Notes: a model not told the origin generated them from the sequence alone. Positions 4,597 through 45,065 are shown, numbered from the stretch's first letter. The stretch: 64,000 bases of DNA from Macrostomum hystrix (GCA_950097015.1 CATNEN010000024.1:6014001-6078000), one strand, 5' to 3'. Numbers and translations: made by a program.

Positions 4597-4902
4597 CTGA
4601 GTGTACAATTGGCCCGAGGGGAGAGTAGGGAAGAGCGCGCTGTTAGCCGAAACCGGTGAATGTACATGCTGGATCACATGATAAAATTCTGCGTACATTT
4701 GTGGCGCGCAAAGAGAAGGAATGCGGCTGGCCGTGTTGATTGAAGAGTTTTGGGTGAGGGGTGGCGGGCAGGGAGAGGCGGAAAAAAACGCTTTCCAGTT
4801 GTGCAGATCATTCATTCTATAGAATCTAGCCCAAGGCGCCCAAGGCCAATAGCGCAGCACAAACCCCCTGATTTAAAAAAAATGTTTTAATTGTAATATA
4901 GT

Positions 4903-4910
4903 TAAGTTAG
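4903..4910. repeat. Left target-site duplication TAAGTTAG
   Basis: Identical to 45058-45065. The direct repeat extends to GTTAAGTTAG (4901-4910 and 45056-45065). Confidence 0.9.
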
Positions 4911-5379
4911 ACGTCTATACTTCCAGTACCAGAACCAGTACCAGAACCAGTACCAGAAAAAAATTATGTTATAGCCAACAAAAAATCGACAAGCAACTAA
5001 TAAAAAGACTTCTAACAGATGAAATACTTATATATCGGTCCGAAAATATCATTATTGAGAATAAAATTAATAAATATCGACGGACTTGCGCACAACACAC
5101 AAAAAATGGTTTACTTTCACAAAACGTTTTTTAATACATTTTTTCATAGAATAAAACAAATTTGCTCAACCAACTGAGTAAACGAATACAAAAAGCGGTT
5201 TACTAAATATCGCAACTACTAAAATCACAACTCAAAACTCACCTCATTAAATGTGTTTGTAAAATTTATTTTTTTTATAATCATCGTAAACTTCATCAAA
5301 AAAACTAAAAATATAACCTCACTTTTGCGCTTCGCAGGATTATTACTCGTACATCATATACAGCTGAGAGCAATGATAA
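4911..5379 (+). repeat. Left terminal inverted repeat, non-satellite part (469 bp, AT-rich, with CCAGTACCAGAA x3)
   Basis: Collinear reverse complement of 44589-45057 (paired coordinates sum to 49968). I found one mismatch by eye (5137 vs 44831). Confidence 0.95.
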
Positions 5380-8300
5380 GGAAGGAAACATTATCTGTGA
5401 ACACGGCTGTAAAATTTCAGAGCCCTGACGTGTCGCGTCTCGGAGTTGTAGACCCTCGAGTCCCCCCCACTCTGATATCTCCCATTTTAAAAGTACTTTT
5501 CGTCACCTCACTGAATCTGGTGGTCAAAAGAAGCTGAAAACTCAGATCTGGAAGGAAACATTATCTGTGAACACGGCTGTAAAATTTCAGAGCCCTGACT
5601 AGTCGCGTCTCGGAGTTGTAGACCCTCGAGTCCCCCCCACTCTGATATCTCCCATTTTAAAAGTACTTTTCGTCACCTCACTGAATCTGGTGGTCAGACG
5701 AGGCTAAAAACTCAGATCTGGAAGGAAACATTATCTGTGAACACGGCTGTAAAATTTCAGAGCCCTGACTATTCGCGTCTCGGAGTTGTAGACCCTCGAG
5801 TCCCCCCCACTCTGATATCTCCCATTTTAAAAGTACTTTTCGTCACCTCACTGAATCTGGTGGTCAAAAGAAGCTGAAAACTCAGATCTGGAAGGAAACA
5901 TTATCTGTGAACACGGCTGTAAAATTTCAGAGCCCTGACTAGTCGCGTCTCGGAGTTGTAGACCCTCGAGTCCCCCCCACTCTGATATCTCCCATTTTAA
6001 AAGTACTTTTCGTCACCTCACTGAATCTGGTGGTCAGACGAGGCTAAAAACTTAGATCTGGAAGGAAACATTATCTGTAAACACGGCTGTAAAATTTCAG
6101 AGCCCTGACTATTCGCGTCTCGGAGTTGTAGACCCTCGAGTCCCCCCCACTCTGATATCTCCCATTTTAAAAGTACTTTTCGTCACCTCACTGAATCTGG
6201 TGGTCAAAAGAAGCTGAAAACTCAGATCTGGAAGGAAACATTATCTGTAAACACGGCTGTAAAATTTCAGAGCCCTGACTATTCGCGTCTCGGAGTTGTA
6301 GACCCTCGAGTCCCCCCCACTCTGATATCTCCCATTTTAAAAGTACTTTTCGTCACCTCACTGAATCTGGTGGTCAAAAGAAGCTGAAAACTCAGATCTG
6401 GAAGGAAACATTATCTGTAAACACGGCTGTAAAATTTCAGAGCCCTGACTATTCGCGTCTCGGAGTTGTAGACCCTCGAGTCCCCCCCACTCTGATATCT
6501 CCCATTTTAAAAGTACTTTTCGTCACCTCACTGAATCTGGTGGTCAAAAGAAGCTGAAAACTCAGATCTGGAAGGAAACATTATCTGTGAACACGGCTGT
6601 AAAATTTCAGAGCCCTGACTAGTCGCGTCTCGGAGTTGTAGACCCTCGAGTCCCCCCCACTCTGATATCTCCCATTTTAAAAGTACTTTTCGTCACCTCA
6701 CTGAATCTGGTGGTCAAAAGAAGCTGAAAACTCAGATCTGGAAGGAAACATTATCTGTGAACACGGCTGTAAAATTTCAGAGCCCTGACTAGTCACGTCT
6801 CGGAGTTGTAGACCCTCGAGTCCCCCCCACTCTGATATCTCCCATTTTAAAAGTACTTTTCGTCACCTCACTGAATCTGGTGGTCAAAAGAAGCTGAAAA
6901 CTCAGATCTGGAAGGAAACATTATCTGTGAACACGGCTGTAAAATTTCAGAGCCCTGACTAGTCGCGTCTCGGAGTTGTAGACCCTCGAGTCCCCCCCAC
7001 TCTGATATCTCCCATTTTAAAAGTACTTTTCGTCACCTCACTGAATCTGGTGGTCAGACGAGGCTAAAAACTCAGATCTGGAAGGAAACATTATCTGTGA
7101 ACACGGCTGTAAAATTTCAGAGCCCTGACTATTCGCGTCTCGGAGTTGTAGACCCTCGAGTCCCCCCCACTCTGATATCTCCCATTTTAAAAGTACTTTT
7201 CGTCACCTCACTGAATCTGGTGGTCAAAAGAAGCTGAAAACTCAGATCTGGAAGGAAACATTATCTGTGAACACGGCTGTAAAATTTCAGAGCCCTGACT
7301 ATTCGCGTCTCGGAGTTGTAGACCCTCGAGTCCCCCCCACTCTGATATCTCCCATTTTAAAAGTACTTTTCGTCACCTCACTGAATCTGGTGGTCAAAAG
7401 AAGCTGAAAACTCAGATCTGGAAGGAAACATTATCTGTAAACACGGCTGTAAAATTTCAGAGCCCTGACTATTCGCGTCTCGGAGTTGTAGACCCTCGAG
7501 TCCCCCCCACTCTGATATCTCCCATTTTAAAAGTACTTTTCGTCACCTCACTGAATCTGGTGGTCAAAAGAAGCTGAAAACTCAGATCTGGAAGGAAACA
7601 TTATCTGTAAACACGGCTGTAAAATTTCAGAGCCCTGACTATTCGCGTCTCGGAGTTGTAGACCCTCGAGTCCCCCCCACTCTGATATCTCCCATTTTAA
7701 AAGTACTTTTCGTCACCTCACTGAATCTGGTGGTCAAAAGAAGCTGAAAACTCAGATCTGGAAGGAAACATTATCTGTGAACACGGCTGTAAAATTTCAG
7801 AGCCCTGACTAGTCGCGTCTCGGAGTTGTAGACCCTCGAGTCCCCCCACTCTGATATCTCCCATTTTAAAAGTACTTTTCGTCACCTCACTGAATCTGGT
7901 GGTCAGACGAGGCTAAAAACTCAGATCTGGAAGGAAACATTATCTGTAAACACGGCTGTAAAATTTCAGAGCCCTGACTAGTCGCGTCTCGGAGTTGTAG
8001 ACCCTCGAGTCCCCCCCACTCTGATATCTCCCATTTTAAAAGTACTTTTCGTCACCTCACTGAATCTGGTGGTCAAAAGAAGCTGAAAACTCAGATCTGG
8101 AAGGAAACATTATCTGTGAACACGGCTGTAAAATTTCAGAGCCCTGACTAGTCGCGTCTCGGAGTTGTAGACCCTCGAGTCCCCCCCACTCTGATATCTC
8201 CCATTTTAAAAGTACTTTTCGTCACCTCACTGAATCTGGTGGTCAGACGAGGCTAAAAACTCAGATCTGGAAGGAAACATTATCTGTGAACACGGCTGTA

Positions 8301-11300
8301 AAATTTCAGAGCCCTGACTAGTCGCGTCTCGGAGTTGTAGACCCTCGAGTCCCCCCCACTCTGATATCTCCCATTTTAAAAGTACTTTTCGTCACCTCAC
8401 TGAATCTGGTGGTCAAAAGAAGCTGAAAACTCAGATCTGGAAGGAAACATTATCTGTGAACACGGCTGTAAAATTTCAGAGCCCTGACTAGTCGCGTCTC
8501 GGAGTTGTAGACCCTCGAGTCCCCCCACTCTGATATCTCCCATTTTAAAAGTACTTTTCGTCACCTCACTGAATCTGGTGGTCAGACGAGGCTAAAAACT
8601 CAGATCTGGAAGGAAACATTATCTGTAAACACGGCTGTAAAATTTCAGAGCCCTGACTAGTCGCGTCTCGGAGTTGTAGACCCTCGAGTCCCCCCCACTC
8701 TGATATCTCCCATTTTAAAAGTACTTTTCGTCACCTCACTGAATCTGGTGGTCAAAAGAAGCTGAAAACTCAGATCTGGAAGGAAACATTATCTGTGAAC
8801 ACGGCTGTAAAATTTCAGAGCCCTGACTAGTCGCGTCTCGGAGTTGTAGACCCTCGAGTCCCCCCCACTCTGATATCTCCCATTTTAAAAGTACTTTTCG
8901 TCACCTCACTGAATCTGGTGGTCAAAAGAAGCTGAAAACTCAGATCTGGAAGGAAACATTATCTGTAAACACGGCTGTAAAATTTCAGAGCCCTGACTAT
9001 TCGCGTCTCGGAGTTGTAGACCCTCGAGTCCCCCCCACTCTGATATCTCCCATTTTAAAAGTACTTTTCGTCACCTCACTGAATCTGGTGGTCAAAAGAA
9101 GCTGAAAACTCAGATCTGGAAGGAAACATTATCTGTAAACACGGCTGTAAAATTTCAGAGCCCTGACTATTCGCGTCTCGGAGTTGTAGACCCTCGAGTC
9201 CCCCCCACTCTGATATCTCCCATTTTAAAAGTACTTTTCGTCACCTCACTGAATCTGGTGGTCAAAAGAAGCTGAAAACTCAGATCTGGAAGGAAACATT
9301 ATCTGTAAACACGGCTGTAAAATTTCAGAGCCCTGACTATTCGCGTCTCGGAGTTGTAGACCCTCGAGTCCCCCCCACTCTGATATCTCCCATTTTAAAA
9401 GTACTTTTCGTCACCTCACTGAATCTGGTGGTCAAAAGAAGCTGAAAACTCAGATCTGGAAGGAAACATTATCTGTGAACACGGCTGTAAAATTTCAGAG
9501 CCCTGACTAGTCGCGTCTCGGAGTTGTAGACCCTCGAGTCCCCCCACTCTGATATCTCCCATTTTAAAAGTACTTTTCGTCACCTCACTGAATCTGGTGG
9601 TCAGACGAGGCTAAAAACTCAGATCTGGAAGGAAACATTATCTGTAAACACGGCTGTAAAATTTCAGAGCCCTGACTAGTCGCGTCTCGGAGTTGTAGAC
9701 CCTCGAGTCCCCCCCACTCTGATATCTCCCATTTTAAAAGTACTTTTCGTCACCTCACTGAATCTGGTGGTCAAAAGAAGCTGAAAACTCAGATCTGGAA
9801 GGAAACATTATCTGTGAACACGGCTGTAAAATTTCAGAGCCCTGACTAGTCGCGTCTCGGAGTTGTAGACCCTCGAGTCCCCCCCACTCTGATATCTCCC
9901 ATTTTAAAAGTACTTTTCGTCACCTCACTGAATCTGGTGGTCAAAAGAAGCTGAAAACTCAGATCTGGAAGGAAACATTATCTGTAAACACGGCTGTAAA
10001 ATTTCAGAGCCCTGACTATTCGCGTCTCGGAGTTGTAGACCCTCGAGTCCCCCCCACTCTGATATCTCCCATTTTAAAAGTACTTTTCGTCACCTCACTG
10101 AATCTGGTGGTCAAAAGAAGCTGAAAACTCAGATCTGGAAGGAAACATTATCTGTAAACACGGCTGTAAAATTTCAGAGCCCTGACTATTCGCGTCTCGG
10201 AGTTGTAGACCCTCGAGTCCCCCCCACTCTGATATCTCCCATTTTAAAAGTACTTTTCGTCACCTCACTGAATCTGGTGGTCAAAAGAAGCTGAAAACTC
10301 AGATCTGGAAGGAAACATTATCTGTAAACACGGCTGTAAAATTTCAGAGCCCTGACTATTCGCGTCTCGGAGTTGTAGACCCTCGAGTCCCCCCCACTCT
10401 GATATCTCCCATTTTAAAAGTACTTTTCGTCACCTCACTGAATCTGGTGGTCAAAAGAAGCTGAAAACTCAGATCTGGAAGGAAACATTATCTGTAAACA
10501 CGGCTGTAAAATTTCAGAGCCCTGACTAGTCGCGTCTCGGAGTTGTAGACCCTCGAGTCCCCCCCACTCTTATATCTCCCATTTTAAAAGTACTTTTCGT
10601 CACCTCACTGAATCTGGTGGTCAAAAGAAGCTGAAAACTCAGATCTGGAAGGAAACATTATCTGTGAACACGGCTGTAAAATTTCAGAGCCCTGACTAGT
10701 CACGTCTCGGAGTTGTAGACCCTCGAGTCCCCCCCACTCTGATATCTCCCATTTTAAAAGTACTTTTCGTCACCTCACTGAATCTGGTGGTCAGACGAGG
10801 CTAAAAACTTAGATCTGGAAGGAAACATTATCTGTAAACACGGCTGTAAAATTTCAGAGCCCTGACTATTCGCGTCTCGGAGTTGTAGACCCTCGAGTCC
10901 CCCCCACTCTGATATCTCCCATTTTAAAAGTACTTTTCGTCACCTCACTGAATCTGGTGGTCAAAAGAAGCTGAAAACTCAGATCTGGAAGGAAACATTA
11001 TCTGTAAACACGGCTGTAAAATTTCAGAGCCCTGACTATTCGCGTCTCGGAGTTGTAGACCCTCGAGTCCCCCCCACTCTGATATCTCCCATTTTAAAAG
11101 TACTTTTCGTCACCTCACTGAATCTGGTGGTCAAAAGAAGCTGAAAACTCAGATCTGGAAGGAAACATTATCTGTAAACACGGCTGTAAAATTTCAGAGC
11201 CCTGACTATTCGCGTCTCGGAGTTGTAGACCCTCGAGTCCCCCCCACTCTGATATCTCCCATTTTAAAAGTACTTTTCGTCACCTCACTGAATCTGGTGG

Positions 11301-13186
11301 TCAAAAGAAGCTGAAAACTCAGATCTGGAAGGAAACATTATCTGTAAACACGGCTGTAAAATTTCAGAGCCCTGACTATTCGCGTCTCGGAGTTGTAGAC
11401 CCTCGAGTCCCCCCCACTCTGATATCTCCCATTTTAAAAGTACTTTTCGTCACCTCACTGAATCTGGTGGTCAAAAGAAGCTGAAAACTCAGATCTGGAA
11501 GGAAACATTATCTGTGAACACGGCTGTAAAATTTCAGAGCCCTGACTAGTCGCGTCTCGGAGTTGTAGACCCTCGAGTCCCCCCCACTCTGATATCTCCC
11601 ATTTTAAAAGTACTTTTCGTCACCTCACTGAATCTGGTGGTCAAAAGAAGCTGAAAACTCAGATCTGGAAGGAAACATTATCTGTGAACACGGCTGTAAA
11701 ATTTCAGAGCCCTGACTAGTCACGTCTCGGAGTTGTAGACCCTCGAGTCCCCCCCACTCTGATATCTCCCATTTTAAAAGTACTTTTCGTCACCTCACTG
11801 AATCTGGTGGTCAGACGAGGCTAAAAACTCAGATCTGGAAGGAAACATTATCTGTAAACACGGCTGTAAAATTTCAGAGCCCTGACTATTCGCGTCTCGG
11901 AGTTGTAGACCCTCGAGTCCCCCCCACTCTGATATCTCCCATTTTAAAAGTACTTTTCGTCACCTCACTGAATCTGGTGGTCAAAAGAAGCTGAAAACTC
12001 AGATCTGGAAGGAAACATTATCTGTGAACACGGCTGTAAAATTTCAGAGCCCTGACTAGTCGCGTCTCGGAGTTGTAGACCCTCGAGTCCCCCCCACTCT
12101 GATATCTCCCATTTTAAAAGTACTTTTCGTCACCTCACTGAATCTGGTGGTCAAAAGAAGCTGAAAACTCAGATCTGGAAGGAAACATTATCTGTGAACA
12201 CGGCTGTAAAATTTCAGAGCCCTGACTATTCGCGTCTCGGAGTTGTAGACCCTCGAGTCCCCCCCACTCTGATATCTCCCATTTTAAAAGTACTTTTCGT
12301 CACCTCACTGAATCTGGTGGTCAAAAGAAGCTGAAAACTCAGATCTGGAAGGAAACATTATCTGTGAACACGGCTGTAAAATTTCAGAGCCCTGACTAGT
12401 CGCGTCTCGGAGTTGTAGACCCTCGAGTCCCCCCACTCTGATATCTCCCATTTTAAAAGTACTTTTCGTCACCTCACTGAATCTGGTGGTCAGACGAGGC
12501 TAAAAACTCAGATCTGGAAGGAAACATTATCTGTAAACACGGCTGTAAAATTTCAGAGCCCTGACTAGTCGCGTCTCGGAGTTGTAGACCCTCGAGTCCC
12601 CCCCACTCTGATATCTCCCATTTTAAAAGTACTTTTCGTCACCTCACTGAATCTGGTGGTCAAAAGAAGCTGAAAACTCAGATCTGGAAGGAAACATTAT
12701 CTGTGAACACGGCTGTAAAATTTCAGAGCCCTGACTAGTCGCGTCTCGGAGTTGTAGACCCTCGATTCCCCCCCACTCTGATATCTCCCATTTTAAAAGT
12801 ACTTTTCGTCACCTCACTGAATCTGGTGGTCAAAAGAAGCTGAAAACTCAGATCTGGAAGGAAACATTATCTGTAAACACGGCTGTAAAATTTCAGAGCC
12901 CTGACTATTCGCGTCTCGGAGTTGTAGACCCTCGAGTCCCCCCCACTCTGATATCTCCCATTTTAAAAGTACTTTTCGTCACCTCACTGAATCTGGTGGT
13001 CAAAAGAAGCTGAAAACTCAGATCTGGAAGGAAACATTATCTGTAAACACGGCTGTAAAATTTCAGAGCCCTGACTATTCGCGTCTCGGAGTTGTAGACC
13101 CTCGAGTCCCCCCCACTCTGATATCTCCCATTTTAAAAGTACTTTTCGTCACCTCACTGAATCTGGTGGTCAAAAGAAGCTGAAAA
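5380..13186 (+). repeat. Left-arm tandem array of a 170-bp monomer, ~46 copies
   Basis: GAAGGAAACATT recurs at 5381, 5551, 5721 and onward. Monomers differ at only a few polymorphic sites. Confidence 0.98.
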
Positions 13187-13569
13187 ATGAGGTTTCGAAG
13201 GAGCTATTGTTTTTGTAGTCTGTATTTTTTGTAGTTTTTTTTTTTTGATTTTACTGAATATAATTTAAGATTTGCTTTTGGTAAATTTTTCGTGAGCCCT
13301 CCTCTTTTTGAAACCAGGCTTGGGACTGGCTAAGGCAGAGTTTTTCACAAAGTCTTTAATATATTTTAAGTTCGGTGTTAGAAGATTTTTGTTTATTTTT
13401 TAAGGTTTTTGTTCGTATTAGTGTTTCTGTGTCACACAAAGGCCACTATTTTGCATATGTCTTATAATATTTTGCAGCTTAGATTATTCACAGTTTTACA
13501 TTGCAAAGCGGTGCCATAATTGTTTACAGAATTGACTTGTTGTTATAACAAAAACTACAGAATTGACAT

Positions 13570-13575
13570 TTTATT
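13570..13575 (-). terminator. Candidate polyadenylation signal AATAAA of the transposase transcript
   Basis: AATAAA on the minus strand ~70 bp after the ORF stop at 13647, in an AT-rich stretch. Confidence 0.4.
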
Positions 13576-13646
13576 TTTAAGCAAGTAGCTTTTAGTAATT
13601 AGTGTGAGTACATTTTTTCGCTGCACTTCTTGGTGCATCCATCCAG

Positions 13647-18077: not shown

Positions 18078-18645
18078 GGTTAAAAATATATGAATATACT
18101 AGCAGACGATTGAAATCTGCTTTCCTCAAGGCTTTATACTCGAAAATTTATGCATGGGTTGTTCGGATAGGGATATGAGATAGCAAGCAAGAAGCAGATA
18201 AAGCAGCTGATTGGATATTCCAGCTACTAGTGTAAAACAGAGCACGGTACACACCCCAGAACACTTATTTTGTCAGGCATTAGCGATAAAACGTAAGGAC
18301 AAAGCACTAAGAACTAAATGCAATAGAGGATACGCAATCGTCACTATAAAATACGAAGGCTTTTAATAATGCGAAGACTATAAAACACGAGGCTTGAAAT
18401 CTCAACACTCAACTTCAAACGCTAAAGCCTCAAAAGCCGACAAACATAAGAGGGCATTAGTACTTCAAATAATAAAAAAACAAATAGCAAAAATCAGATC
18501 CAACATGCAAAAATTGAGACCCATGTGCACGACAAGGCAAAAATATTACCCTGTATTACCAATTGCGCATTACATCCCTACATGTTGCGCAACTCAACGC
18601 TAAAAATACGCAGGCATCTCAGAGTGAGGGTGTTGTGTTGTGCCC

Positions 18646-33600: not shown

Positions 33601-36600
33601 TTTAAAATGGGAGATATCAGAGTGGGGGGGACTCGAGGGTCTACAACTCCGAGACGCGAATAGTCAGGGCTCTGAAATTTTACAGCCGTGTTTACAGATA
33701 ATGTTTCCTTCCAGATCTGAGTTTTCAGCTTCTTTTGACCACCAGATTCAGTGAGGTGACGAAAAGTACTTTTAAAATGGGAGATATCAGAGTGGGGGGG
33801 ACTCGAGGGTCTACAACTCCGAGACGCGAATAGTCAGGGCTCTGAAATTTTACAGCCGTGTTTACAGATAATGTTTCCTTCCAGATCTGAGTTTTCAGCT
33901 TCTTTTGACCACCAGATTCAGTGAGGTGACGAAAAGTACTTTTAAAATGGGAGATATCAGAGTGGGGGGGACTCGAGGGTCTACAACTCCGAGACGCGAA
34001 TAGTCAGGGCTCTGAAATTTTACAGCCGTGTTTACAGATAATGTTTCCTTCCAGATCTGAGTTTTCAGCTTCTTTTGACCACCAGATTCAGTGAGGTGAC
34101 GAAAAGTACTTTTAAAATGGGAGATATCAGAGTGGGGGGGACTCGAGGGTCTACAACTCCGAGACGCGAATAGTCAGGGCTCTGAAATTTTACAGCCGTG
34201 TTTACAGATAATGTTTCCTTCCAGATCTAAGTTTTTAGCCTCGTCTGACCACCAGATTCAGTGAGGTGACGAAAAGTACTTTTAAAATGGGAGATATCAG
34301 AGTGGGGGGGACTCGAGGGTCTACAACTCCGAGACGCGAATAGTCAGGGCTCTGAAATTTTACAGCCGTGTTTACAGATAATGTTTCCTTCCAGATCTGA
34401 GTTTTTAGCCTCGTCTGACCACCAGATTCAGTGAGGTGACGAAAAGTACTTTTAAAATGGGAGATATCAGAGTGGGGGGGACTCGAGGGTCTACAACTCC
34501 GAGACGCGACTAGTCAGGGCTCTGAAATTTTACAGCCGTGTTCACAGATAATGTTTCCTTCCAGATCTGAGTTTTCAGCTTCTTTTGACCACCAGATTCA
34601 GTGAGGTGACGAAAAGTACTTTTAAAATGGGAGATATCAGAGTGGGGGGGACTCGAGGGTCTACAACTCCGAGACGCGAATAGTCAGGGCTCTGAAATTT
34701 TACAGCCGTGTTCACAGATAATGTTTCCTTCCAGATCTGAGTTTTCAGCTTCTTTTGACCACCAGATTCAGTGAGGTGACGAAAAGTACTTTTAAAATGG
34801 GAGATATCAGAGTGGGGGGGACTCGAGGGTATACAACTCCGAGACGCGAATAGTCAGGGCTCTGAAATTTTACAGCCGTGTTTACAGATAATGTTTCCTT
34901 CCAGATCTGAGTTTTCAGCTTCTTTTGACCACCAGATTCAGTGAGGTGACGAAAAGTACTTTTAAAATGGGAGATATCAGAGTGGGGGGGACTCGAGGGT
35001 CTACAACTCCGAGACGCGAATAGTCAGGGCTCTGAAATTTTACAGCCGTGTTTACAGATAATGTTTCCTTCCAGATCTGAGTTTTCAGCTTCTTTTGACC
35101 ACCAGATTCAGTGAGGTGACGAAAAGTACTTTTAAAATGGGAGATATCAGAGTGGGGGGGACTCGAGGGTCTACAACTCCGAGACGTGACTAGTCAGGGC
35201 TCTGAAATTTTACAGCCGTGTTCACAGATAATGTTTCCTTCCAGATCTGAGTTTTCAGCTTCTTTTGACCACCAGATTCAGTGAGGTGACGAAAAGTACT
35301 TTTAAAATGGGAGATATCAGAGTGGGGGGGACTCGAGGGTCTACAACTCCGAGACGCGACTAGTCAGGGCTCTGAAATTTTACAGCCGTGTTCACAGATA
35401 ATGTTTCCTTCCAGATCTGAGTTTTCAGCTTCTTTTGACCACCAGATTCAGTGAGGTGACGAAAAGTACTTTTAAAATGGGAGATATAAGAGTGGGGGGG
35501 ACTCGAGGGTCTACAACTCCGAGACGCGACTAGTCAGGGCTCTGAAATTTTACAGCCGTGTTTACAGATAATGTTTCCTTCCAGATCTGAGTTTTCAGCT
35601 TCTTTTGACCACCAGATTCAGTGAGGTGACGAAAAGTACTTTTAAAATGGGAGATATCAGAGTGGGGGGGACTCGAGGGTCTACAACTCCGAGACGCGAA
35701 TAGTCAGGGCTCTGAAATTTTACAGCCGTGTTTACAGATAATGTTTCCTTCCAGATCTGAGTTTTCAGCTTCTTTTGACCACCAGATTCAGTGAGGTGAC
35801 GAAAAGTACTTTTAAAATGGGAGATATCAGAGTGGGGGGGACTCGAGGGTCTACAACTCCGAGACGCGAATAGTCAGGGCTCTGAAATTTTACAGCCGTG
35901 TTTACAGATAATGTTTCCTTCCAGATCTGAGTTTTCAGCTTCTTTTGACCACCAGATTCAGTGAGGTGACGAAAAGTACTTTTAAAATTGGAGATATCAG
36001 AGTGGGGGGGACTCGAGGGTCTACAACTCCGAGACGCGAATAGTCAGGGCTCTGAAATTTTACAGCCGTGTTTACAGATAATGTTTCCTTCCAGATCTAA
36101 GTTTTTAGCCTCGTCTGACCACCAGATTCAGTGAGGTGACGAAAAGTACTTTTAAAATGGGAGATATCAGAGTGGGGGGGACTCGAGGGTCTACAACTCC
36201 GAGACGCGACTAGTCAGGGCTCTGAAATTTTACAGCCGTGTTCACAGATAATGTTTCCTTCCAGATCTGAGTTTTCAGCTTCTTTTGACCACCAGATTCA
36301 GTGAGGTGACGAAAAGTACTTTTAAAATGGGAGATATCAGAGTGGGGGGGACTCGAGGGTCTACAACTCCGAGACGCGACTAGTCAGGGCTCTGAAATTT
36401 TACAGCCGTGTTTACAGATAATGTTTCCTTCCAGATCTGAGTTTTTAGCCTCGTCTGACCACCAGATTCAGTGAGGTGACGAAAAGTACTTTTAAAATGG
36501 GAGATATCAGAGTGGGGGGACTCGAGGGTCTACAACTCCGAGACGCGAATAGTCAGGGCTCTGAAATTTTACAGCCGTGTTTACAGATAATGTTTCCTTC

Positions 36601-39600
36601 CAGATCTGAGTTTTCAGCTTCTTTTGACCACCAGATTCAGTGAGGTGACGAAAAGTACTTTTAAAATGGGAGATATCAGAGTGGGGGGGACTCGAGGGTC
36701 TACAACTCCGAGACGCGAATAGTCAGGGCTCTGAAATTTTACAGCCGTGTTTACAGATAATGTTTCCTTCCAGATCTGAGTTTTCAGCTTCTTTTGACCA
36801 CCAGATTCAGTGAGGTGACGAAAAGTACTTTTAAAATGGGAGATATCAGAGTGGGGGGGACTCGAGGGTCTACAACTCCGAGACGCGACTAGTCAGGGCT
36901 CTGAAATTTTACAGCCGTGTTCACAGATAATGTTTCCTTCCAGATCTGAGTTTTCAGCTTCTTTTGACCACCAGATTCAGTGAGGTGACGAAAAGTACTT
37001 TTAAAATGGGAGATATCAGAGTGGGGGGGACTCGAGGGTCTACAACTCCGAGACGCGACTAGTCAGGGCTCTGAAATTTTACAGCCGTGTTTACAGATAA
37101 TGTTTCCTTCCAGATCTGAGTTTTTAGCCTCGTCTGACCACCAGATTCAGTGAGGTGACGAAAAGTACTTTTAAAATGGGAGATATCAGAGTGGGGGGAC
37201 TCGAGGGTCTACAACTCCGAGACGCGACTAGTCAGGGCTCTGAAATTTTACAGCCGTGTTCACAGATAATGTTTCCTTCCAGATCTGAGTTTTCAGCTTC
37301 TTTTGACCACCAGATTCAGTGAGGTGACGAAAAGTACTTTTAAAATGGGAGATATCAGAGTGGGGGGGACTCGAGGGTCTACAACTCCGAGACGCGAATA
37401 GTCAGGGCTCTGAAATTTTACAGCCGTGTTTACAGATAATGTTTCCTTCCAGATCTGAGTTTTCAGCTTCTTTTGACCACCAGATTCAGTGAGGTGACGA
37501 AAAGTACTTTTAAAATGGGAGATATCAGAGTGGGGGGGACTCGAGGGTCTACAACTCCGAGACGCGAATAGTCAGGGCTCTGAAATTTTACAGCCGTGTT
37601 TACAGATAATGTTTCCTTCCAGATCTAAGTTTTTAGCCTCGTCTGACCACCAGATTCAGTGAGGTGACGAAAAGTACTTTTAAAATGGGAGATATCAGAG
37701 TGGGGGGGACTCGAGGGTCTACAACTCCGAGACGCGACTAGTCAGGGCTCTGAAATTTTACAGCCGTGTTCACAGATAATGTTTCCTTCCAGATCTGAGT
37801 TTTCAGCTTCTTTTGACCACCAGATTCAGTGAGGTGACGAAAAGTACTTTTAAAATGGGAGATATCAGAGTGGGGGGGACTCGAGGGTCTACAACTCCGA
37901 GACGCGAATAGTCAGGGCTCTGAAATTTTACAGCCGTGTTTACAGATAATGTTTCCTTCCAGATCTGAGTTTTTAGCCTCGTCTGACCACCAGATTCAGT
38001 GAGGTGACGAAAAGTACTTTTAAAATGGGAGATATCAGAGTGGGGGGGACTCGAGGGTCTACAACTCCGAGACGTGACTAGTCAGGGCTCTGAAATTTTA
38101 CAGCCGTGTTCACAGATAATGTTTCCTTCCAGATCTGAGTTTTCAGCTTCTTTTGACCACCAGATTCAGTGAGGTGACGAAAAGTACTTTTAAAATGGGA
38201 GATATCAGAGTGGGGGGGACTCGAGGGTCTACAACTCCGAGACGCGACTAGTCAGGGCTCTGAAATTTTACAGCCGTGTTCACAGATAATGTTTCCTTCC
38301 AGATCTGAGTTTTCAGCTTCTTTTGACCACCAGATTCAGTGAGGTGACGAAAAGTACTTTTAAAATGGGAGATATCAGAGTGGGGGGGACTCGAGGGTCT
38401 ACAACTCCGAGACGCGAATAGTCAGGGCTCTGAAATTTTACAGCCGTGTTTACAGATAATGTTTCCTTCCAGATCTGAGTTTTCAGCTTCTTTTGACCAC
38501 CAGATTCAGTGAGGTGACGAAAAGTACTTTTAAAATGGGAGATATCAGAGTGGGGGGGACTCGAGGGTCTACAACTCCGAGACGCGAATAGTCAGGGCTC
38601 TGAAATTTTACAGCCGTGTTTACAGATAATGTTTCCTTCCAGATCTGAGTTTTCAGCTTCTTTTGACCACCAGATTCAGTGAGGTGACGAAAAGTACTTT
38701 TAAAATGGGAGATATCAGAGTGGGGGGGACTCGAGGGTCTACAACTCCGAGACGCGAATAGTCAGGGCTCTGAAATTTTACAGCCGTGTTTACAGATAAT
38801 GTTTCCTTCCAGATCTGAGTTTTTAGCCTCGTCTGACCACCAGATTCAGTGAGGTGACGAAAAGTACTTTTAAAATGGGAGATATCAGAGTGGGGGGGAC
38901 TCGAGGGTCTACAACTCCGAGACGCGAATAGTCAGGGCTCTGAAATTTTACAGCCGTGTTTACAGATAATGTTTCCTTCCAGATCTGAGTTTTCAGCCTC
39001 GTCTGACCACCAGATTCAGTGAGGTGACGAAAAGTACTTTTAAAATGGGAGATATCAGAGTGGGGGGGACTCGAGGGTCTACAACTCCGAGACGCGACTA
39101 GTCAGGGCTCTGAAATTTTACAGCCGTGTTCACAGATAATGTTTCCTTCCAGATCTGAGTTTTCAGCTTCTTTTGACCACCAGATTCAGTGAGGTGACGA
39201 AAAGTACTTTTAAAATGGGAGATATCAGAGTGGGGGGGACTCGAGGGTCTACAACTCCGAGACGCGAATAGTCAGGGCTCTGAAATTTTACAGCCGTGTT
39301 CACAGATAATGTTTCCTTCCAGATCTGAGTTTTCAGCTTCTTTTGACCACCAGATTCAGTGAGGTGACGAAAAGTACTTTTAAAATGGGAGATATCAGAG
39401 TGGGGGGGACTCGAGGGTATACAACTCCGAGACGCGAATAGTCAGGGCTCTGAAATTTTACAGCCGTGTTTACAGATAATGTTTCCTTCCAGATCTGAGT
39501 TTTCAGCTTCTTTTGACCACCAGATTCAGTGAGGTGACGAAAAGTACTTTTAAAATGGGAGATATCAGAGTGGGGGGGACTCGAGGGTCTACAACTCCGA

Positions 39601-42600
39601 GACGCGAATAGTCAGGGCTCTGAAATTTTACAGCCGTGTTTACAGATAATGTTTCCTTCCAGATCTGAGTTTTCAGCTTCTTTTGACCACCAGATTCAGT
39701 GAGGTGACGAAAAGTACTTTTAAAATGGGAGATATCAGAGTGGGGGGGACTCGAGGGTCTACAACTCCGAGACGCGAATAGTCAGGGCTCTGAAATTTTA
39801 CAGCCGTGTTTACAGATAATGTTTCCTTCCAGATCTGAGTTTTCAGCTTCTTTTGACCACCAGATTCAGTGAGGTGACGAAAAGTACTTTTAAAATGGGA
39901 GATATCAGAGTGGGGGGGACTCGAGGGTCTACAACTCCGAGACGCGAATAGTCAGGGCTCTGAAATTTTACAGCCGTGTTTACAGATAATGTTTCCTTCC
40001 AGATCTGAGTTTTCAGCTTCTTTTGACCACCAGATTCAGTGAGGTGACGAAAAGTACTTTTAAAATGGGAGATATCAGAGTGGGGGGGACTCGAGGGTCT
40101 ACAACTCCGAGACGCGACTAGTCAGGGCTCTGAAATTTTACAGCCGTGTTTACAGATAATGTTTCCTTCCAGATCTGAGTTTTTAGCCTCGTCTGACCAC
40201 CAGATTCAGTGAGGTGACGAAAAGTACTTTTAAAATGGGAGATATCAGAGTGGGGGGACTCGAGGGTCTACAACTCCGAGACGCGAATAGTCAGGGCTCT
40301 GAAATTTTACAGCCGTGTTTACAGATAATGTTTCCTTCCAGATCTGAGTTTTCAGCTTCTTTTGACCACCAGATTCAGTGAGGTGACGAAAAGTACTTTT
40401 AAAATGGGAGATATCAGAGTGGGGGGGACTCGAGGGTCTACAACTCCGAGACGCGAATAGTCAGGGCTCTGAAATTTTACAGCCGTGTTTACAGATAATG
40501 TTTCCTTCCAGATCTGAGTTTTCAGCTTCTTTTGACCACCAGATTCAGTGAGGTGACGAAAAGTACTTTTAAAATGGGAGATATCAGAGTGGGGGGGACT
40601 CGAGGGTCTACAACTCCGAGACGCGACTAGTCAGGGCTCTGAAATTTTACAGCCGTGTTCACAGATAATGTTTCCTTCCAGATCTGAGTTTTCAGCTTCT
40701 TTTGACCACCAGATTCAGTGAGGTGACGAAAAGTACTTTTAAAATGGGAGATATCAGAGTGGGGGGGACTCGAGGGTCTACAACTCCGAGACGCGACTAG
40801 TCAGGGCTCTGAAATTTTACAGCCGTGTTTACAGATAATGTTTCCTTCCAGATCTGAGTTTTTAGCCTCGTCTGACCACCAGATTCAGTGAGGTGACGAA
40901 AAGTACTTTTAAAATGGGAGATATCAGAGTGGGGGGACTCGAGGGTCTACAACTCCGAGACGCGACTAGTCAGGGCTCTGAAATTTTACAGCCGTGTTCA
41001 CAGATAATGTTTCCTTCCAGATCTGAGTTTTCAGCTTCTTTTGACCACCAGATTCAGTGAGGTGACGAAAAGTACTTTTAAAATGGGAGATATCAGAGTG
41101 GGGGGGACTCGAGGGTCTACAACTCCGAGACGCGAATAGTCAGGGCTCTGAAATTTTACAGCCGTGTTTACAGATAATGTTTCCTTCCAGATCTGAGTTT
41201 TCAGCTTCTTTTGACCACCAGATTCAGTGAGGTGACGAAAAGTACTTTTAAAATGGGAGATATCAGAGTGGGGGGGACTCGAGGGTCTACAACTCCGAGA
41301 CGCGAATAGTCAGGGCTCTGAAATTTTACAGCCGTGTTTACAGATAATGTTTCCTTCCAGATCTAAGTTTTTAGCCTCGTCTGACCACCAGATTCAGTGA
41401 GGTGACGAAAAGTACTTTTAAAATGGGAGATATCAGAGTGGGGGGGACTCGAGGGTCTACAACTCCGAGACGCGACTAGTCAGGGCTCTGAAATTTTACA
41501 GCCGTGTTCACAGATAATGTTTCCTTCCAGATCTGAGTTTTCAGCTTCTTTTGACCACCAGATTCAGTGAGGTGACGAAAAGTACTTTTAAAATGGGAGA
41601 TATCAGAGTGGGGGGGACTCGAGGGTCTACAACTCCGAGACGCGAATAGTCAGGGCTCTGAAATTTTACAGCCGTGTTTACAGATAATGTTTCCTTCCAG
41701 ATCTGAGTTTTTAGCCTCGTCTGACCACCAGATTCAGTGAGGTGACGAAAAGTACTTTTAAAATGGGAGATATCAGAGTGGGGGGGACTCGAGGGTCTAC
41801 AACTCCGAGACGTGACTAGTCAGGGCTCTGAAATTTTACAGCCGTGTTCACAGATAATGTTTCCTTCCAGATCTGAGTTTTCAGCTTCTTTTGACCACCA
41901 GATTCAGTGAGGTGACGAAAAGTACTTTTAAAATGGGAGATATCAGAGTGGGGGGGACTCGAGGGTCTACAACTCCGAGACGCGACTAGTCAGGGCTCTG
42001 AAATTTTACAGCCGTGTTCACAGATAATGTTTCCTTCCAGATCTGAGTTTTCAGCTTCTTTTGACCACCAGATTCAGTGAGGTGACGAAAAGTACTTTTA
42101 AAATGGGAGATATCAGAGTGGGGGGGACTCGAGGGTCTACAACTCCGAGACGCGAATAGTCAGGGCTCTGAAATTTTACAGCCGTGTTTACAGATAATGT
42201 TTCCTTCCAGATCTGAGTTTTCAGCTTCTTTTGACCACCAGATTCAGTGAGGTGACGAAAAGTACTTTTAAAATGGGAGATATCAGAGTGGGGGGGACTC
42301 GAGGGTCTACAACTCCGAGACGCGAATAGTCAGGGCTCTGAAATTTTACAGCCGTGTTTACAGATAATGTTTCCTTCCAGATCTGAGTTTTCAGCTTCTT
42401 TTGACCACCAGATTCAGTGAGGTGACGAAAAGTACTTTTAAAATGGGAGATATCAGAGTGGGGGGGACTCGAGGGTCTACAACTCCGAGACGCGAATAGT
42501 CAGGGCTCTGAAATTTTACAGCCGTGTTTACAGATAATGTTTCCTTCCAGATCTAAGTTTTTAGCCTCGTCTGACCACCAGATTCAGTGAGGTGACGAAA

Positions 42601-44588
42601 AGTACTTTTAAAATGGGAGATATCAGAGTGGGGGGGACTCGAGGGTCTACAACTCCGAGACGCGACTAGTCAGGGCTCTGAAATTTTACAGCCGTGTTCA
42701 CAGATAATGTTTCCTTCCAGATCTGAGTTTTCAGCTTCTTTTGACCACCAGATTCAGTGAGGTGACGAAAAGTACTTTTAAAATGGGAGATATCAGAGTG
42801 GGGGGGACTCGAGGGTCTACAACTCCGAGACGCGAATAGTCAGGGCTCTGAAATTTTACAGCCGTGTTCACAGATAATGTTTCCTTCCAGATCTGAGTTT
42901 TTAGCCTCGTCTGACCACCAGATTCAGTGAGGTGACGAAAAGTACTTTTAAAATGGGAGATATCAGAGTGGGGGGGACTCGAGGGTCTACAACTCCGAGA
43001 CGCGACTAGTCAGGGCTCTGAAATTTTACAGCCGTGTTCACAGATAATGTTTCCTTCCAGATCTGAGTTTTCAGCTTCTTTTGACCACCAGATTCAGTGA
43101 GGTGACGAAAAGTACTTTTAAAATGGGAGATATCAGAGTGGGGGGGACTCGAGGGTCTACAACTCCGAGACGTGACTAGTCAGGGCTCTGAAATTTTACA
43201 GCCGTGTTCACAGATAATGTTTCCTTCCAGATCTGAGTTTTCAGCTTCTTTTGACCACCAGATTCAGTGAGGTGACGAAAAGTACTTTTAAAATGGGAGA
43301 TATCAGAGTGGGGGGGACTCGAGGGTCTACAACTCCGAGACGCGACTAGTCAGGGCTCTGAAATTTTACAGCCGTGTTCACAGATAATGTTTCCTTCCAG
43401 ATCTGAGTTTTCAGCTTCTTTTGACCACCAGATTCAGTGAGGTGACGAAAAGTACTTTTAAAATGGGAGATATCAGAGTGGGGGGGACTCGAGGGTCTAC
43501 AACTCCGAGACGCGAATAGTCAGGGCTCTGAAATTTTACAGCCGTGTTTACAGATAATGTTTCCTTCCAGATCTGAGTTTTCAGCTTCTTTTGACCACCA
43601 GATTCAGTGAGGTGACGAAAAGTACTTTTAAAATGGGAGATATCAGAGTGGGGGGGACTCGAGGGTCTACAACTCCGAGACGCGAATAGTCAGGGCTCTG
43701 AAATTTTACAGCCGTGTTTACAGATAATGTTTCCTTCCAGATCTGAGTTTTCAGCTTCTTTTGACCACCAGATTCAGTGAGGTGACGAAAAGTACTTTTA
43801 AAATGGGAGATATCAGAGTGGGGGGGACTCGAGGGTCTACAACTCCGAGACGCGAATAGTCAGGGCTCTGAAATTTTACAGCCGTGTTTACAGATAATGT
43901 TTCCTTCCAGATCTAAGTTTTTAGCCTCGTCTGACCACCAGATTCAGTGAGGTGACGAAAAGTACTTTTAAAATGGGAGATATCAGAGTGGGGGGGACTC
44001 GAGGGTCTACAACTCCGAGACGCGACTAGTCAGGGCTCTGAAATTTTACAGCCGTGTTCACAGATAATGTTTCCTTCCAGATCTGAGTTTTCAGCTTCTT
44101 TTGACCACCAGATTCAGTGAGGTGACGAAAAGTACTTTTAAAATGGGAGATATCAGAGTGGGGGGGACTCGAGGGTCTACAACTCCGAGACGCGAATAGT
44201 CAGGGCTCTGAAATTTTACAGCCGTGTTCACAGATAATGTTTCCTTCCAGATCTGAGTTTTTAGCCTCGTCTGACCACCAGATTCAGTGAGGTGACGAAA
44301 AGTACTTTTAAAATGGGAGATATCAGAGTGGGGGGGACTCGAGGGTCTACAACTCCGAGACGCGACTAGTCAGGGCTCTGAAATTTTACAGCCGTGTTCA
44401 CAGATAATGTTTCCTTCCAGATCTGAGTTTTCAGCTTCTTTTGACCACCAGATTCAGTGAGGTGACGAAAAGTACTTTTAAAATGGGAGATATCAGAGTG
44501 GGGGGGACTCGAGGGTCTACAACTCCGAGACGCGACACGTCAGGGCTCTGAAATTTTACAGCCGTGTTCACAGATAATGTTTCCTTCC
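18646..44588 (-). repeat. Right-arm tandem array of the same 170-bp monomer in inverted orientation, ~152 copies
   Basis: Reverse complement of the left-array monomer with the same polymorphic sites. Confidence 0.98.
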
Positions 44589-45057
44589 TTATCATTGCTC
44601 TCAGCTGTATATGATGTACGAGTAATAATCCTGCGAAGCGCAAAAGTGAGGTTATATTTTTAGTTTTTTTGATGAAGTTTACGATGATTATAAAAAAAAT
44701 AAATTTTACAAACACATTTAATGAGGTGAGTTTTGAGTTGTGATTTTAGTAGTTGCGATATTTAGTAAACCGCTTTTTGTATTCGTTTACTCAGTTGGTT
44801 GAGCAAATTTGTTTTATTCTATGAAAAAATATATTAAAAAACGTTTTGTGAAAGTAAACCATTTTTTGTGTGTTGTGCGCAAGTCCGTCGATATTTATTA
44901 ATTTTATTCTCAATAATGATATTTTCGGACCGATATATAAGTATTTCATCTGTTAGAAGTCTTTTTATTAGTTGCTTGTCGATTTTTTGTTGGCTATAAC
45001 ATAATTTTTTTCTGGTACTGGTTCTGGTACTGGTTCTGGTACTGGAAGTATAGACGT
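44589..45057 (-). repeat. Right terminal inverted repeat, non-satellite part (469 bp)
   Basis: Reverse complement of 4911-5379. The mirrored 94-aa ORFs (5253-5537 and 44431-44715) translate identically. Confidence 0.95.
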
Positions 45058-45065
45058 TAAGTTAG
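45058..45065. repeat. Right target-site duplication TAAGTTAG
   Basis: Identical to 4903-4910. Confidence 0.9.

What the first reader, a model, noticed from the sequence alone, without database searches (positions are those of the whole stretch)
4911..45057. 40-kb autonomous-looking foldback MULE whose inverted arms are mostly satellite arrays
Seen: perfect terminal inverted ends, a perfect TSD, 469-bp TIRs with one visible mismatch, inverted arrays of one 170-bp monomer (arms 8.3 kb and 26.4 kb) and a single intact 4.4-kb transposase ORF in the loop. Known: MULEs have ~9-bp TSDs; Drosophila FB-NOF, Rehavkus and some Phantom MULEs have foldback arms with internal tandem repeats. Inference: this is a young element of that structural class, several-fold larger than typical ones, with ~85% of its length being satellite. 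The intact TSD suggests it inserted as one unit, although the arrays may have expanded afterwards.
Basis: partly seen in the sequence, partly recalled or inferred. Interest (0 to 1): 0.9.

Follow-up and report, generated by a model that had tools for sequence, protein, structure and literature searches.

The report
Giant Rehavkus-type foldback transposon, satellite arms
This is a real, young-looking 40-kb cut-and-paste transposon of the Rehavkus/NOF branch of the Mutator superfamily in a Macrostomum flatworm. About 84% of it is two oppositely oriented arrays of a 170-bp satellite, which makes it an extreme example of a design already described in beetles and flies, not a new kind of element.

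Summary
The element spans 4911-45057. Its 469-bp terminal inverted repeats differ at one base, and a perfect target-site duplication flanks it: 8 bp flush, readable as 9 or 10 bp. Inverted arrays of a 170-bp monomer hold 46 copies (left) and 153 copies (right). One intact 1476-aa ORF sits in the loop.

The ORF's catalytic core has no Pfam match. It is homologous to the published Rehavkus-1_TC transposase of Tribolium, and its closest fold is the Drosophila NOF-FB protein, followed by FAR1, ZSWIM and IS256 relatives. The core, Ulp1 protease and PHD finger lie in the same order as in Rehavkus-1_TC. I re-derived the Tribolium element: 9.5 kb, a 9-bp duplication, a 412-bp unique inverted repeat, then inverted 164-bp arrays of 4.7 and 9.3 copies. 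That is the same plan with arms 10-16 times shorter.

Two cautions apply. The long arm contains an exact 8.5-kb direct duplication at a 9.9-kb offset, which is either very recent growth or an assembly artefact. No long reads were available.

The host is a Macrostomum flatworm; the Rehavkus survey I read lists only arthropods and annelids. This scan had already noted sister copies of 15-35 kb elsewhere in this genome. Verdict: a new, extreme member of a known kind.

The parts
4903..4910 (.). Left target-site duplication TAAGTTAG (readable as 4901-4910, GTTAAGTTAG)
   Evidence: the identical 8-mer lies flush against both ends
4911..5379 (+). Left terminal inverted repeat, unique 469-bp part; holds a 12-bp x3 subterminal repeat CCAGTACCAGAA at 4923-4958
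   Evidence: 468/469 identical to the reverse complement of 44589-45057
5380..13186 (+). Left arm: 46 monomers of the 170-bp satellite
13187..13646 (-). Unique loop sequence downstream of the ORF; other copies in the reads diverge to the left of 13293
   Evidence: loose ends at 13293 in X1 and X2; depth 151 against 528
13647..18077 (-). Intact 1476-aa ORF: Rehavkus/NOF-type transposase with a C-terminal Ulp1 protease and PHD finger
13677..13811 (-). PHD-type zinc finger
   Evidence: Pfam PHD E 0.046, below cut-off; collinear with the Tribolium PHD, which passes Pfam
13905..14429 (-). Ulp1/SENP (C48) protease domain; catalytic H, D, Q and C aligned with SENP2
   Evidence: (SENP2 E 2.2e-6)
14745..15644 (-). 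RNase H-like catalytic core: D at 15642-15644 (LHLDATGS), D at 15402-15404 (VTDFSW), CxxH at 15267-15278, E at 14745-14747 (NSYVES)
   Evidence: invariant or near-invariant columns; strand and helix positions; the same motifs in six Rehavkus sequences
16014..16238 (-). Four-stranded zinc-binding N-terminal domain (conserved C..C..H), WRKY/FLYWCH-like; presumed DNA-binding part
   Evidence: strands 21-78 of the model; conserved C48, C53, H83; the function is inferred
16470..17754 (-). In-frame minisatellites inside the ORF: 15 bp x 13.3 (16470-16668) and 33 bp x 31.8 (16705-17754)
   Evidence: other frames are open too, so translation is not shown
18078..18645 (-). Unique loop sequence upstream of the ORF (presumed promoter region)
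18646..44588 (-). Right arm: 153 monomers of the same satellite in inverted orientation; includes an exact 8500-nt duplication (32437-40936 and 22582-31081)
44589..45057 (-). Right terminal inverted repeat, unique part
45058..45065 (.). Right target-site duplication TAAGTTAG

Best explanation
The element is a structurally complete, probably autonomous cut-and-paste DNA transposon of the Rehavkus/NOF group (Mutator superfamily in the wide sense), sitting in a Macrostomum flatworm genome.

Shown here: the single ORF encodes, in order, a zinc-binding N-terminal domain, an RNase H-like DDE core with a CxxH motif and a helical insertion, a Ulp1-type protease with a complete catalytic set, and a PHD finger.

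Inferred: the transposase binds the 469-bp terminal inverted repeats, possibly at the 12-bp x3 subterminal repeat. It excises the element and re-inserts it at a staggered cut, which leaves the 8-10-bp duplication.

Shown: inside each terminal repeat lies an array of a 170-bp monomer. Shown by the pattern of monomer variants and inferred as to process: these arrays change length by multi-monomer unequal exchange or replication slippage. That produced arms of 46 and 153 monomers whose outer 11 monomers are still mirror images. The inner parts differ, and the long arm carries an exact 58-monomer duplication.

The element is thus both a transposon and a mobile seed of satellite DNA, as described for Rehavkus elements in Tribolium and for Tetris in Drosophila virilis. 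A role for Ulp1 and PHD in chromatin targeting or in countering silencing is speculation.
For: Ends, duplication, arrays and ORF.

Family: phmmer finds 842 representative clusters, none with a Pfam model for the core. They include Mytilus and Holothuria proteins and Tribolium TC003225. TC003225 is the published Rehavkus-1_TC DDE domain (BLASTP 7e-11).

Catalytic residues D, D, CxxH and N-x3-E are invariant or nearly so in 37-50 relatives and are present here.

Fold: the AF2 model has pLDDT 80. Its best match is NOF-FB P16320, E 1.6e-26, TM 0.55 over 579 residues; next come alpha3, FAR1/FRS, ZSWIM and IS256, and ISCth4 among solved structures.

C-terminal domains: Ulp1 matches SENP2 at 2.2e-6 with H, D, Q and C aligned. 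The Ulp1+PHD module is collinear with Rehavkus-1_TC.

Same plan in a reference element: L002 7136-16634 has a 9-bp duplication, a 412-bp unique inverted repeat, and inverted 164-bp arrays of 4.7 and 9.3 copies.

Multiple near-identical copies: public contigs cover the ORF core at 99.6-99.7% identity in two organism labels.

Literature: Rehavkus elements are foldback transposons with satellite termini, arms over 11 kb and arrays up to 80 kb.
Against: No long read or independent assembly spans an arm, so arm lengths rest on one assembly. The exact 8.5-kb duplication could be an artefact.

No empty site was found.

Transcription is not shown: the only RNA-labelled evidence is one 232-nt contig, from another organism label.

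The ORF start is uncertain, because the N-terminal 480 codons are minisatellite.

Pfam's MULE model does not match.

No similarity was found between the terminal repeat and the monomer that would show the monomers to be transposase-binding sites.

Intra-element gene conversion could keep the arms identical, so identity is a weak clock.
Confidence: 0.85

Rival explanations
1. The element is real, but its present size is not the size that transposed. A much smaller element (arms of a few kb or less) inserted, and the arrays, above all the right arm, expanded in place afterwards. The 40-kb form may be too large or too palindromic to move.
For: The right arm holds an exact 8500-nt duplication at a 9855-nt offset, plus further exact duplications of 2573 and 1451 nt. 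These have zero mismatches and so may postdate the one mismatch seen between the arms. The arms are very unequal, 46 against 153 monomers, and only the outer 11 monomers mirror each other. In a second organism label the satellite-to-ORF depth ratio is about 7, against 190-290 in the first. Tribolium orthologues show in-place bursts up to 80 kb.
Against: Notes from this scan list sister copies of 15-35 kb with multi-kb arms elsewhere in the genome (unverified). That suggests large arms are carried along by transposition. Contig depth is a poor measure of copy number.
Confidence: 0.5
2. Part of the structure is an assembly artefact. The assembler over-expanded or mis-joined the satellite, so one or both arm lengths, or even the link between an arm and the loop, is wrong.
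For: The 8.5-kb zero-mismatch tandem duplication is what a collapsed or duplicated read path would give. Only short-read-derived contigs were available, and none spans an arm. The specific junction of left array and loop has lower depth, 151 against 528.
Against: Both outer junctions are precise and carry a perfect duplication. Contigs in X1 lie on both loop flanks up to the arrays (13302-13488 and 18424-18634). A verified Tribolium reference element has the same architecture.
Confidence: 0.2
3. It is not a Mutator-type element but belongs to another superfamily with long inverted repeats and an 8-bp duplication, such as P (like Galileo), hAT or Zisupton.
For: The flush duplication is 8 bp. 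Pfam MULE does not match. The P-element transposase and Hermes appear among weak matches to solved structures.
Against: The top fold matches are NOF, MULE-derived proteins and IS256-family transposases, at E 1e-26 to 1e-5. P and hAT appear only at about 1e-3 to 1e-2. There is direct sequence homology to Rehavkus-1_TC and a shared domain order.
Confidence: 0.03
4. It is a domesticated host gene derived from a transposase that happens to lie between satellite blocks, not a mobile element.
For: The ORF is intact and carries chromatin-related domains (Ulp1, PHD). Many MULE transposases, such as FAR1, ZSWIM and alpha3, have been domesticated.
Against: It has precise inverted termini and a target-site duplication. 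Sequence variants and loose ends in the reads point to several copies. Other copies are noted in the genome.
Confidence: 0.02

Closest known systems
Rehavkus-1_TC and Rehavkus-3_TC of Tribolium castaneum (Repbase), and the Rehavkus-linked satellites of T. castaneum and T. freemani (bioRxiv 10.1101/2024.12.02.626372)
   Same: Homologous DDE core with the same motifs, DATGS, TDFS, C-x-x-H and N-x3-E. Same order of core, Ulp1 and PHD. Same plan of a unique inverted repeat (412 against 469 bp) followed by inverted arrays of a nucleosome-sized monomer (164 against 170 bp) with unequal arms. Arrays reported to reach 50 monomers per terminus, arms over 11 kb, and an 80-kb free array.
   Different: Only about 23% protein identity. 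Terminal sequences are unrelated. Arms here hold 46 and 153 monomers, against 4.7 and 9.3 in the copy I examined. Total length is 40.1 kb, against 9.5-18.5 kb catalogued. The host is a flatworm; the survey I read lists Arthropoda and Annelida only. This element also has an N-terminal in-frame minisatellite block.
FB-NOF of Drosophila melanogaster (NOF 120.7 kDa protein, P16320)
   Same: Best structural match, E 1.6e-26. It has the same catalytic motifs, and its core motif stretches read almost the same as those of Rehavkus-1_DY in the published alignment. The foldback arms are built of tandem repeats.
   Different: 16% identity. By my reading, the NOF C-terminus looks like a ubiquitin hydrolase (UCH-type) and not Ulp1+PHD; this was not tested. 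FB arms have short, degenerating repeats. The title of a 2013 Gene paper, listed in the references returned, calls FB-NOF non-autonomous.
Tetris (Drosophila virilis foldback element; PMC4079207)
   Same: Inverted repeats with internal ~220-bp tandem repeats that also form kb-size satellite arrays; 8-10-bp duplications.
   Different: No Tetris copy encodes a transposase, so its superfamily is only inferred. Here the transposase is present and intact.
Canonical MULEs (MuDR, Phantom, Tm1) and plant MULEs that carry Ulp1 (KI-MULEs; from my own knowledge)
   Same: RNase H-like core with CxxH and a helical insertion; duplication of about 9 bp; long inverted repeats, with tandem repeats in Tm1; a Ulp1 domain in some plant MULEs.
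   Different: Pfam MULE (PF10551) does not match. Rehavkus is used as the outgroup to MULEs in published trees. No FLYWCH or SWIM domain was detected.

Membership tests
Rehavkus / NOF group (MULE superfamily in the wide sense) | Transposase core homologous to a catalogued Rehavkus transposase | tested here: met
   P0166 (Tribolium TC003225) matches the family profile at E 1e-84 and the window core at BLASTP 7e-11 over about 400 aa. Its sequence is the Rehavkus-1_TC entry in the supplementary alignment of Dupeyron et al. 2019.
Rehavkus / NOF group (MULE superfamily in the wide sense) | Catalytic signature D ... D ... C/DxxH ... E, as DATGS, (V/C)(T/S)D, xAH and (S/N)x3E | tested here: met
   LHLDATGS, VTDFSW, CTNH and NSYVES are present. 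These columns are invariant or near-invariant in 37-50 relatives. The same motifs occur in six Rehavkus entries and in NOF. In the model they sit on strand 1, after strand 4 and on a helix.
Rehavkus / NOF group (MULE superfamily in the wide sense) | PHD finger in the transposase | tested here: met
   Pfam PHD scores E 0.046, below its cut-off. The stretch is nonetheless collinear and homologous with the Tribolium Ulp1+PHD module (BLASTP 6e-13), which passes Pfam (PHD 26.3 bits, C48 44.5 bits). PHD is found in 7 of 37 relatives.
Rehavkus / NOF group (MULE superfamily in the wide sense) | 9-bp target-site duplication | tested here: inconclusive
   The duplication is 8 bp flush and can be read as 9 or 10 bp, because the target bases GT match the element's terminal AC. 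The Tribolium reference copy has a clean 9-bp duplication.
Rehavkus / NOF group (MULE superfamily in the wide sense) | Long terminal inverted repeats with subterminal tandem repeats | tested here: met
   A 469-bp unique inverted repeat is followed by inverted 170-bp arrays. The same is seen in Rehavkus-1_TC, and the literature describes it.
Rehavkus / NOF group (MULE superfamily in the wide sense) | Fold closest to NOF and MULE-derived proteins, not to other DDE superfamilies | tested here: met
   NOF-FB E 1.6e-26; alpha3, FAR1/FRS, ZSWIM and IS256 at 1e-10 to 1e-5. ISCth4 (IS256 family) is the best match among solved structures.
Canonical Mutator-like elements (Pfam MULE domain PF10551) | Match to the Pfam MULE transposase model | tested here: not met
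   No Pfam family at E up to 10 for the core, and none in 37 relatives. This fits Rehavkus being a sister or outgroup of canonical MULEs.
Foldback (FB-like) structural class | Very long inverted arms built mostly of tandem repeats around a short loop | tested here: met
   Arms of 8.3 and 26.4 kb around a 5.5-kb loop; 84% of the element is satellite.
Autonomous element | Intact transposase that is expressed and mobilises its own ends | not testable with these tools
   The ORF is intact with all catalytic residues. The only RNA-labelled evidence is one 232-nt contig in another organism label, and there is no activity assay.

The most novel reading that the evidence does not exclude
This Rehavkus lineage may be currently active in Macrostomum and may be the main generator and spreader of an abundant 170-bp satellite. 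On this reading, whole multi-kb arrays ride along with transposition and then burst in place, differently in closely related lineages. Contig-depth ratios of satellite to transposase are about 190-290 in one organism label and about 7 in another that carries the ORF at 99.6% identity. That would make it a tractable animal model for the birth of satellite DNA from a transposon that still has its own transposase. The conserved Ulp1-PHD module could be a chromatin or anti-silencing device common to the Rehavkus group.
Probability: 0.3. Interest if true: 0.55.

Novelty: new member of a known kind. Interest (0 to 1): 0.35.

Why it matters
Satellite DNA born inside transposon termini is documented, for example by Tetris and by the Tribolium Rehavkus elements. 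In the best-known cases the transposase is missing or decayed.

Here an element with intact ends, an intact duplication and an intact three-domain transposase carries nearly 200 satellite monomers. Sister copies are reported in the same genome, in a laboratory-tractable flatworm genus.

It therefore offers a place to measure how arm length affects mobility, and how arrays grow. The exact 58-monomer duplication shows growth in large steps.

It also extends the Rehavkus group beyond the arthropods and annelids listed in the survey I read. And it shows that Ulp1+PHD is a shared module of the group and not a one-off fusion. None of this changes the known picture; it is a strong example within it.

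Tried and rejected
1. Pfam on the whole ORF and on its three pieces gave no family for the core, only weak Ulp1 and PHD hits.

2. The word-indexed protein search found only 4 proteins in each of two runs. In the second I suspect the low-complexity N-terminal words swamped the seeds. The exhaustive HMMER search was what opened up the family.

3. An exact look-up of the ORF product in public assemblies found nothing on record.

4. Metagenome scans for the reconstructed empty site and for the 32-nt terminus found nothing.

5. I tested whether the 170-bp monomer derives from, or repeats, the terminal inverted repeat or the loop flanks. The best local score was 22, against a shuffled mean of 19 +/- 2, so there is no evidence for it.

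6. I looked for a second inverted repeat at the inner ends of the arms. There is none. The arrays end at different monomer phases and abut unrelated unique sequence.

7. Four other homologue loci were checked for satellite arms. A metagenomic one (L001) has a 186-bp array on one side only. The Mytilus, Holothuria and ENA loci show no comparable arms within 10 kb. Giant arms are therefore not universal in the family.

8. Yuan & Wessler 2011 could not be read: the PMC id I recalled for it was not held.

9. Literature searches for MULE-NOF + foldback, NOF + foldback + MuDR, and a Macrostomum satellite found nothing relevant.

10. The reads tool was given 5901 letters, as the operators advised.

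Full report
OBSERVATION

The 22-nt terminus ACGTCTATACTTCCAGTACCAG occurs exactly twice in the 64-kb window, at 4911-4932 (+) and 45036-45057 (-), against none expected by chance.

An alignment of the two ends shows 469 bp of non-satellite inverted repeat with one mismatch. A base-by-base comparison shows that the arms stay identical for 2391 nt apart from that mismatch.

Tandem Repeats Finder reports two arrays of one 170-bp unit in opposite orientation: 5380-13186 (45.9 copies, 98% matches) and 18646-44588 (152.7 copies, 97% matches). Together they make up 84.1% of the 40,147-bp element.

The loop holds one long ORF, 13647-18077 on the minus strand, 1476 aa.

The target-site duplication is perfect, but its length is ambiguous. 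With symmetric termini it is 8 bp (TAAGTTAG, 4903-4910 and 45058-45065). The target bases GT happen to match the terminal AC of the element, so it can equally be read as 9 or 10 bp.

ARM ANATOMY

I cut the arrays at a fixed anchor and labelled each distinct monomer. There are 25 variants among 197 full monomers.

- The outer 11 monomers of the two arms are in the same order. Further in, the orders differ.
- The long arm is built of large repeated blocks.
- A scan for exact direct repeats found an 8500-nt stretch repeated without a single mismatch at an offset of 9855 nt, which is 58 monomers (40936-32437 and 31081-22582). It also found exact repeats of 2573 and 1451 nt.
- The arrays end at different monomer phases and abut unrelated unique sequence.
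- Neither the terminal repeat nor the loop flanks resemble the monomer beyond chance.

So the arms change by multi-monomer duplication or deletion, not by copying from one another. About 10 kb of the long arm is either very recent or an assembly artefact.

THE PROTEIN

Pfam gives nothing for the core, and only sub-threshold Ulp1 (E 0.029) and PHD (E 0.046) hits at the C-terminus.

An exhaustive HMMER search with the 601-aa core found 842 representative clusters at E <= 1e-3, the best at 34% identity. Named members come from Mytilus coruscus and Holothuria leucospilota. None of 37 aligned relatives has a Pfam model for the core. Of the 37, 7 carry PHD, 3 carry Peptidase_C48 and 1 carries UCH.

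The alignments show invariant or near-invariant D (DATGS), D (TDFSW), C-x-x-H and N-x3-E. All are present in the window ORF, at 15642-15644, 15402-15404, 15267-15278 and 14745-14759.

An AlphaFold2 model built on the alignment (mean pLDDT 80.4, pTM 0.71) places these residues as follows:
- the first D at the end of strand 1;
- the second D after strand 4;
- the E on a helix that follows a long all-helical insertion;
- in front of the core, a small four-stranded domain with conserved C, C and H.

Foldseek against Swiss-Prot models gives the Drosophila "120.7 kDa protein in NOF-FB transposable element" as by far the best match (E 1.6e-26, TM 0.55 by query, 579 residues aligned). Next come K. lactis alpha3, Arabidopsis FAR1/FRS proteins, ZSWIM proteins and IS256-family transposases. 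Among solved structures the best is ISCth4, an IS256-family transposase. A language-model look-up pointed the same way, to MULE clusters (a lead only).

The C-terminal part matches SENP2 (E 2.2e-6) with the catalytic His, Asp, Gln and Cys aligned.

MEMBERSHIP IN REHAVKUS

A profile search returned Tribolium castaneum TC003225 (P0166) at E 1e-84. It aligns pairwise to the window core at E 7e-11 across all catalytic motifs.

The supplementary alignment of Dupeyron et al. 2019 (PMC6446971) prints the DDE domains of six Rehavkus elements. Its Rehavkus-1_TC entry is the P0166 sequence, and all six share the motifs listed above. In the same file the NOF-FB protein carries the same motifs, and its motif stretches read almost the same as those of Rehavkus-1_DY. 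NOF and Rehavkus are therefore one lineage, which explains the fold match.

I then fetched the Tribolium locus (L002) and re-derived the element:
- it spans 7136-16634, 9499 bp;
- it has a perfect 9-bp duplication, CATTATTCA;
- it has a 412-bp unique inverted repeat;
- inside that lie inverted arrays of a 164-bp unit, 4.7 copies on one side and 9.3 on the other, 97-98% alike.

These figures agree with the catalogued 9485 bp, 412-bp inverted repeat and 9-bp duplication.

Downstream of its DDE core, in frames broken in this copy, lie a Peptidase_C48 domain (E 2.1e-11) and a PHD finger (E 7.9e-6). They are collinear and homologous with the window's C-terminus (BLASTP 6e-13).

The window element therefore shares sequence, catalytic signature, domain order and terminal architecture with a reference Rehavkus element. 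It differs in having arms 10-16 times longer.

HOST AND COPIES

An exon of an AMPK gamma-subunit gene in the left flank (1259-1969, minus strand) is 92% identical to a Macrostomum lignano protein and about 60% identical to those of other animals. The host is therefore a Macrostomum flatworm or a very close relative.

Public contigs laid on the loop gave the following:
- In run X1 (organism label A), one 2725-nt contig covers the ORF core with 9 differences, at word depth 528. The satellite has depth of 1.0-1.5 x 10^5.
- In run X2 (organism label B), one 2948-nt contig covers the core with 12 differences, at depth 15.5. The satellite has depth of only about 108, and nothing lies on the right inner junction.
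- Loose ends at 13293 in both runs, together with lower depth on the junction of left array and loop, show that other copies differ there.

Contig depth is a poor measure, so these ratios (about 190-290 against about 7) are a lead and not a result.

Earlier notes of this scan list sister copies of 15.6 to 34.8 kb elsewhere in the same genome. Two were followed up and read as Rehavkus/NOF-type. I did not see those sequences. My tests of the family and of the host were made independently on this window.

WHAT IS KNOWN

- Rehavkus is treated as part of, or sister to, the Mutator superfamily.
- Its listed features are a 9-bp duplication, inverted repeats of 26-400 bp, a PHD finger and a minisatellite, in Arthropoda and Annelida.
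- Catalogued lengths are 4.9-18.5 kb.
[quoted passage not shown] It reports up to 50 monomers per terminus, Rehavkus-like elements with inverted termini over 11 kb, and one derived array of 80.5 kb.
- Tetris in D. virilis shows the same link between inverted-repeat tandem repeats and satellite arrays, but has no transposase.

The design is therefore published. What is new here is the host phylum, the size (40 kb, up to 153 monomers in one arm) and the combination of giant arms with an intact three-domain ORF and an intact duplication. The Ulp1 domain is not mentioned in the papers I could read, but I found it in Rehavkus-1_TC as well. It is a feature of the group and not of this copy.

MECHANISM AND CONFIDENCE

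Shown:
- precise inverted ends and a duplication;
- a DDE-type core with all catalytic residues;
- Ulp1 catalytic residues;
- inverted arrays with block-wise rearrangement;
- several near-identical copies in reads.

Inferred:
- the protein binds the 469-bp ends and moves the element by cut-and-paste with a staggered target cut;
- the arrays grow by unequal exchange or slippage;
- the N-terminal zinc domain binds DNA.

Speculative: Ulp1 and PHD act on chromatin or SUMO marks at the element.

Not shown: transcription, the true start codon, present-day mobility of a 40-kb copy, and the exact length of the long arm.

I put 0.85 on the reading [quoted passage not shown]. I put about 0.5 on a large share of the arms having expanded after insertion.

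VERDICT

This is a new and extreme member of a known kind, already met by this scan on other DNA of the same genome. Interest is moderate to low.

Noticed in passing
L002:11352-12277 (Tribolium castaneum CM000278.3) and window 13677-14429: The reference Rehavkus-1_TC copy also encodes Ulp1 (Pfam C48, E 2.1e-11) followed by a PHD finger, collinear with the window ORF. The papers I could read list only the PHD finger for Rehavkus. Ulp1+PHD therefore looks like a conserved, under-described module of the group.
   Followed up: yes
Supplementary file 2 of PMC6446971 (NOF-FB entry), and one member of alignment A2: The C-terminal third of the Drosophila NOF protein reads like a ubiquitin C-terminal hydrolase, with Cys-box-like and His-box-like stretches. 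One relative in A2 hits Pfam UCH (E 0.0056). Different lineages of this transposase family may thus have fused to different ubiquitin-like proteases (Ulp1 or UCH). The NOF part is judged by eye only.
   Followed up: partly
window 13000-18900 laid on runs X1 and X2: A second organism label from the same study carries the ORF core at 99.6% identity. Its satellite-to-ORF contig-depth ratio is about 7, against 190-290 in the first label, and nothing lies on the right inner junction. This may be a lineage-specific satellite burst, or a depth artefact.
   Followed up: partly
window 22582-40936: An exact 8500-nt direct duplication at a 9855-nt (58-monomer) offset lies inside the long arm. Growth is by large blocks, or else this is an assembly artefact.
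   Followed up: yes
window 16470-17754: About 1.25 kb of in-frame minisatellites (33 bp x 32 encoding AVAASVVPAR(R/G); 15 bp x 13 encoding acidic DAGS(D/E) units) makes up the first third of the ORF. Relatives such as P0005 start right at the zinc domain, so this block is lineage-specific and may not be translated.
   Followed up: partly
L001:14208-17143 (JGI metagenome contig): A 31%-identical homologue (P0006, 1212 aa, with a PHD finger) has about 15 copies of a 186-bp repeat just downstream of the ORF, on one side only. This matches the 'minisatellite before the 3' inverted repeat' described for Rehavkus.
   Followed up: partly
window 81-1969 (-): Exons of an AMPK gamma-subunit (CBS-domain) gene, 92% identical to Macrostomum lignano BOX15_Mlig024209g1. 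I used this to identify the host genus.
   Followed up: yes
window 1058-3423 and 48036-64000: The flanks are crowded with unrelated minisatellites of 19-47-bp period, for example 2867-3210, 48036-48667, 54668-55515, 57183-57844, 58378-58946 and 63608-64000. This fits the tandem-repeat-rich genome reported for M. lignano (PMC5730564).
   Followed up: no
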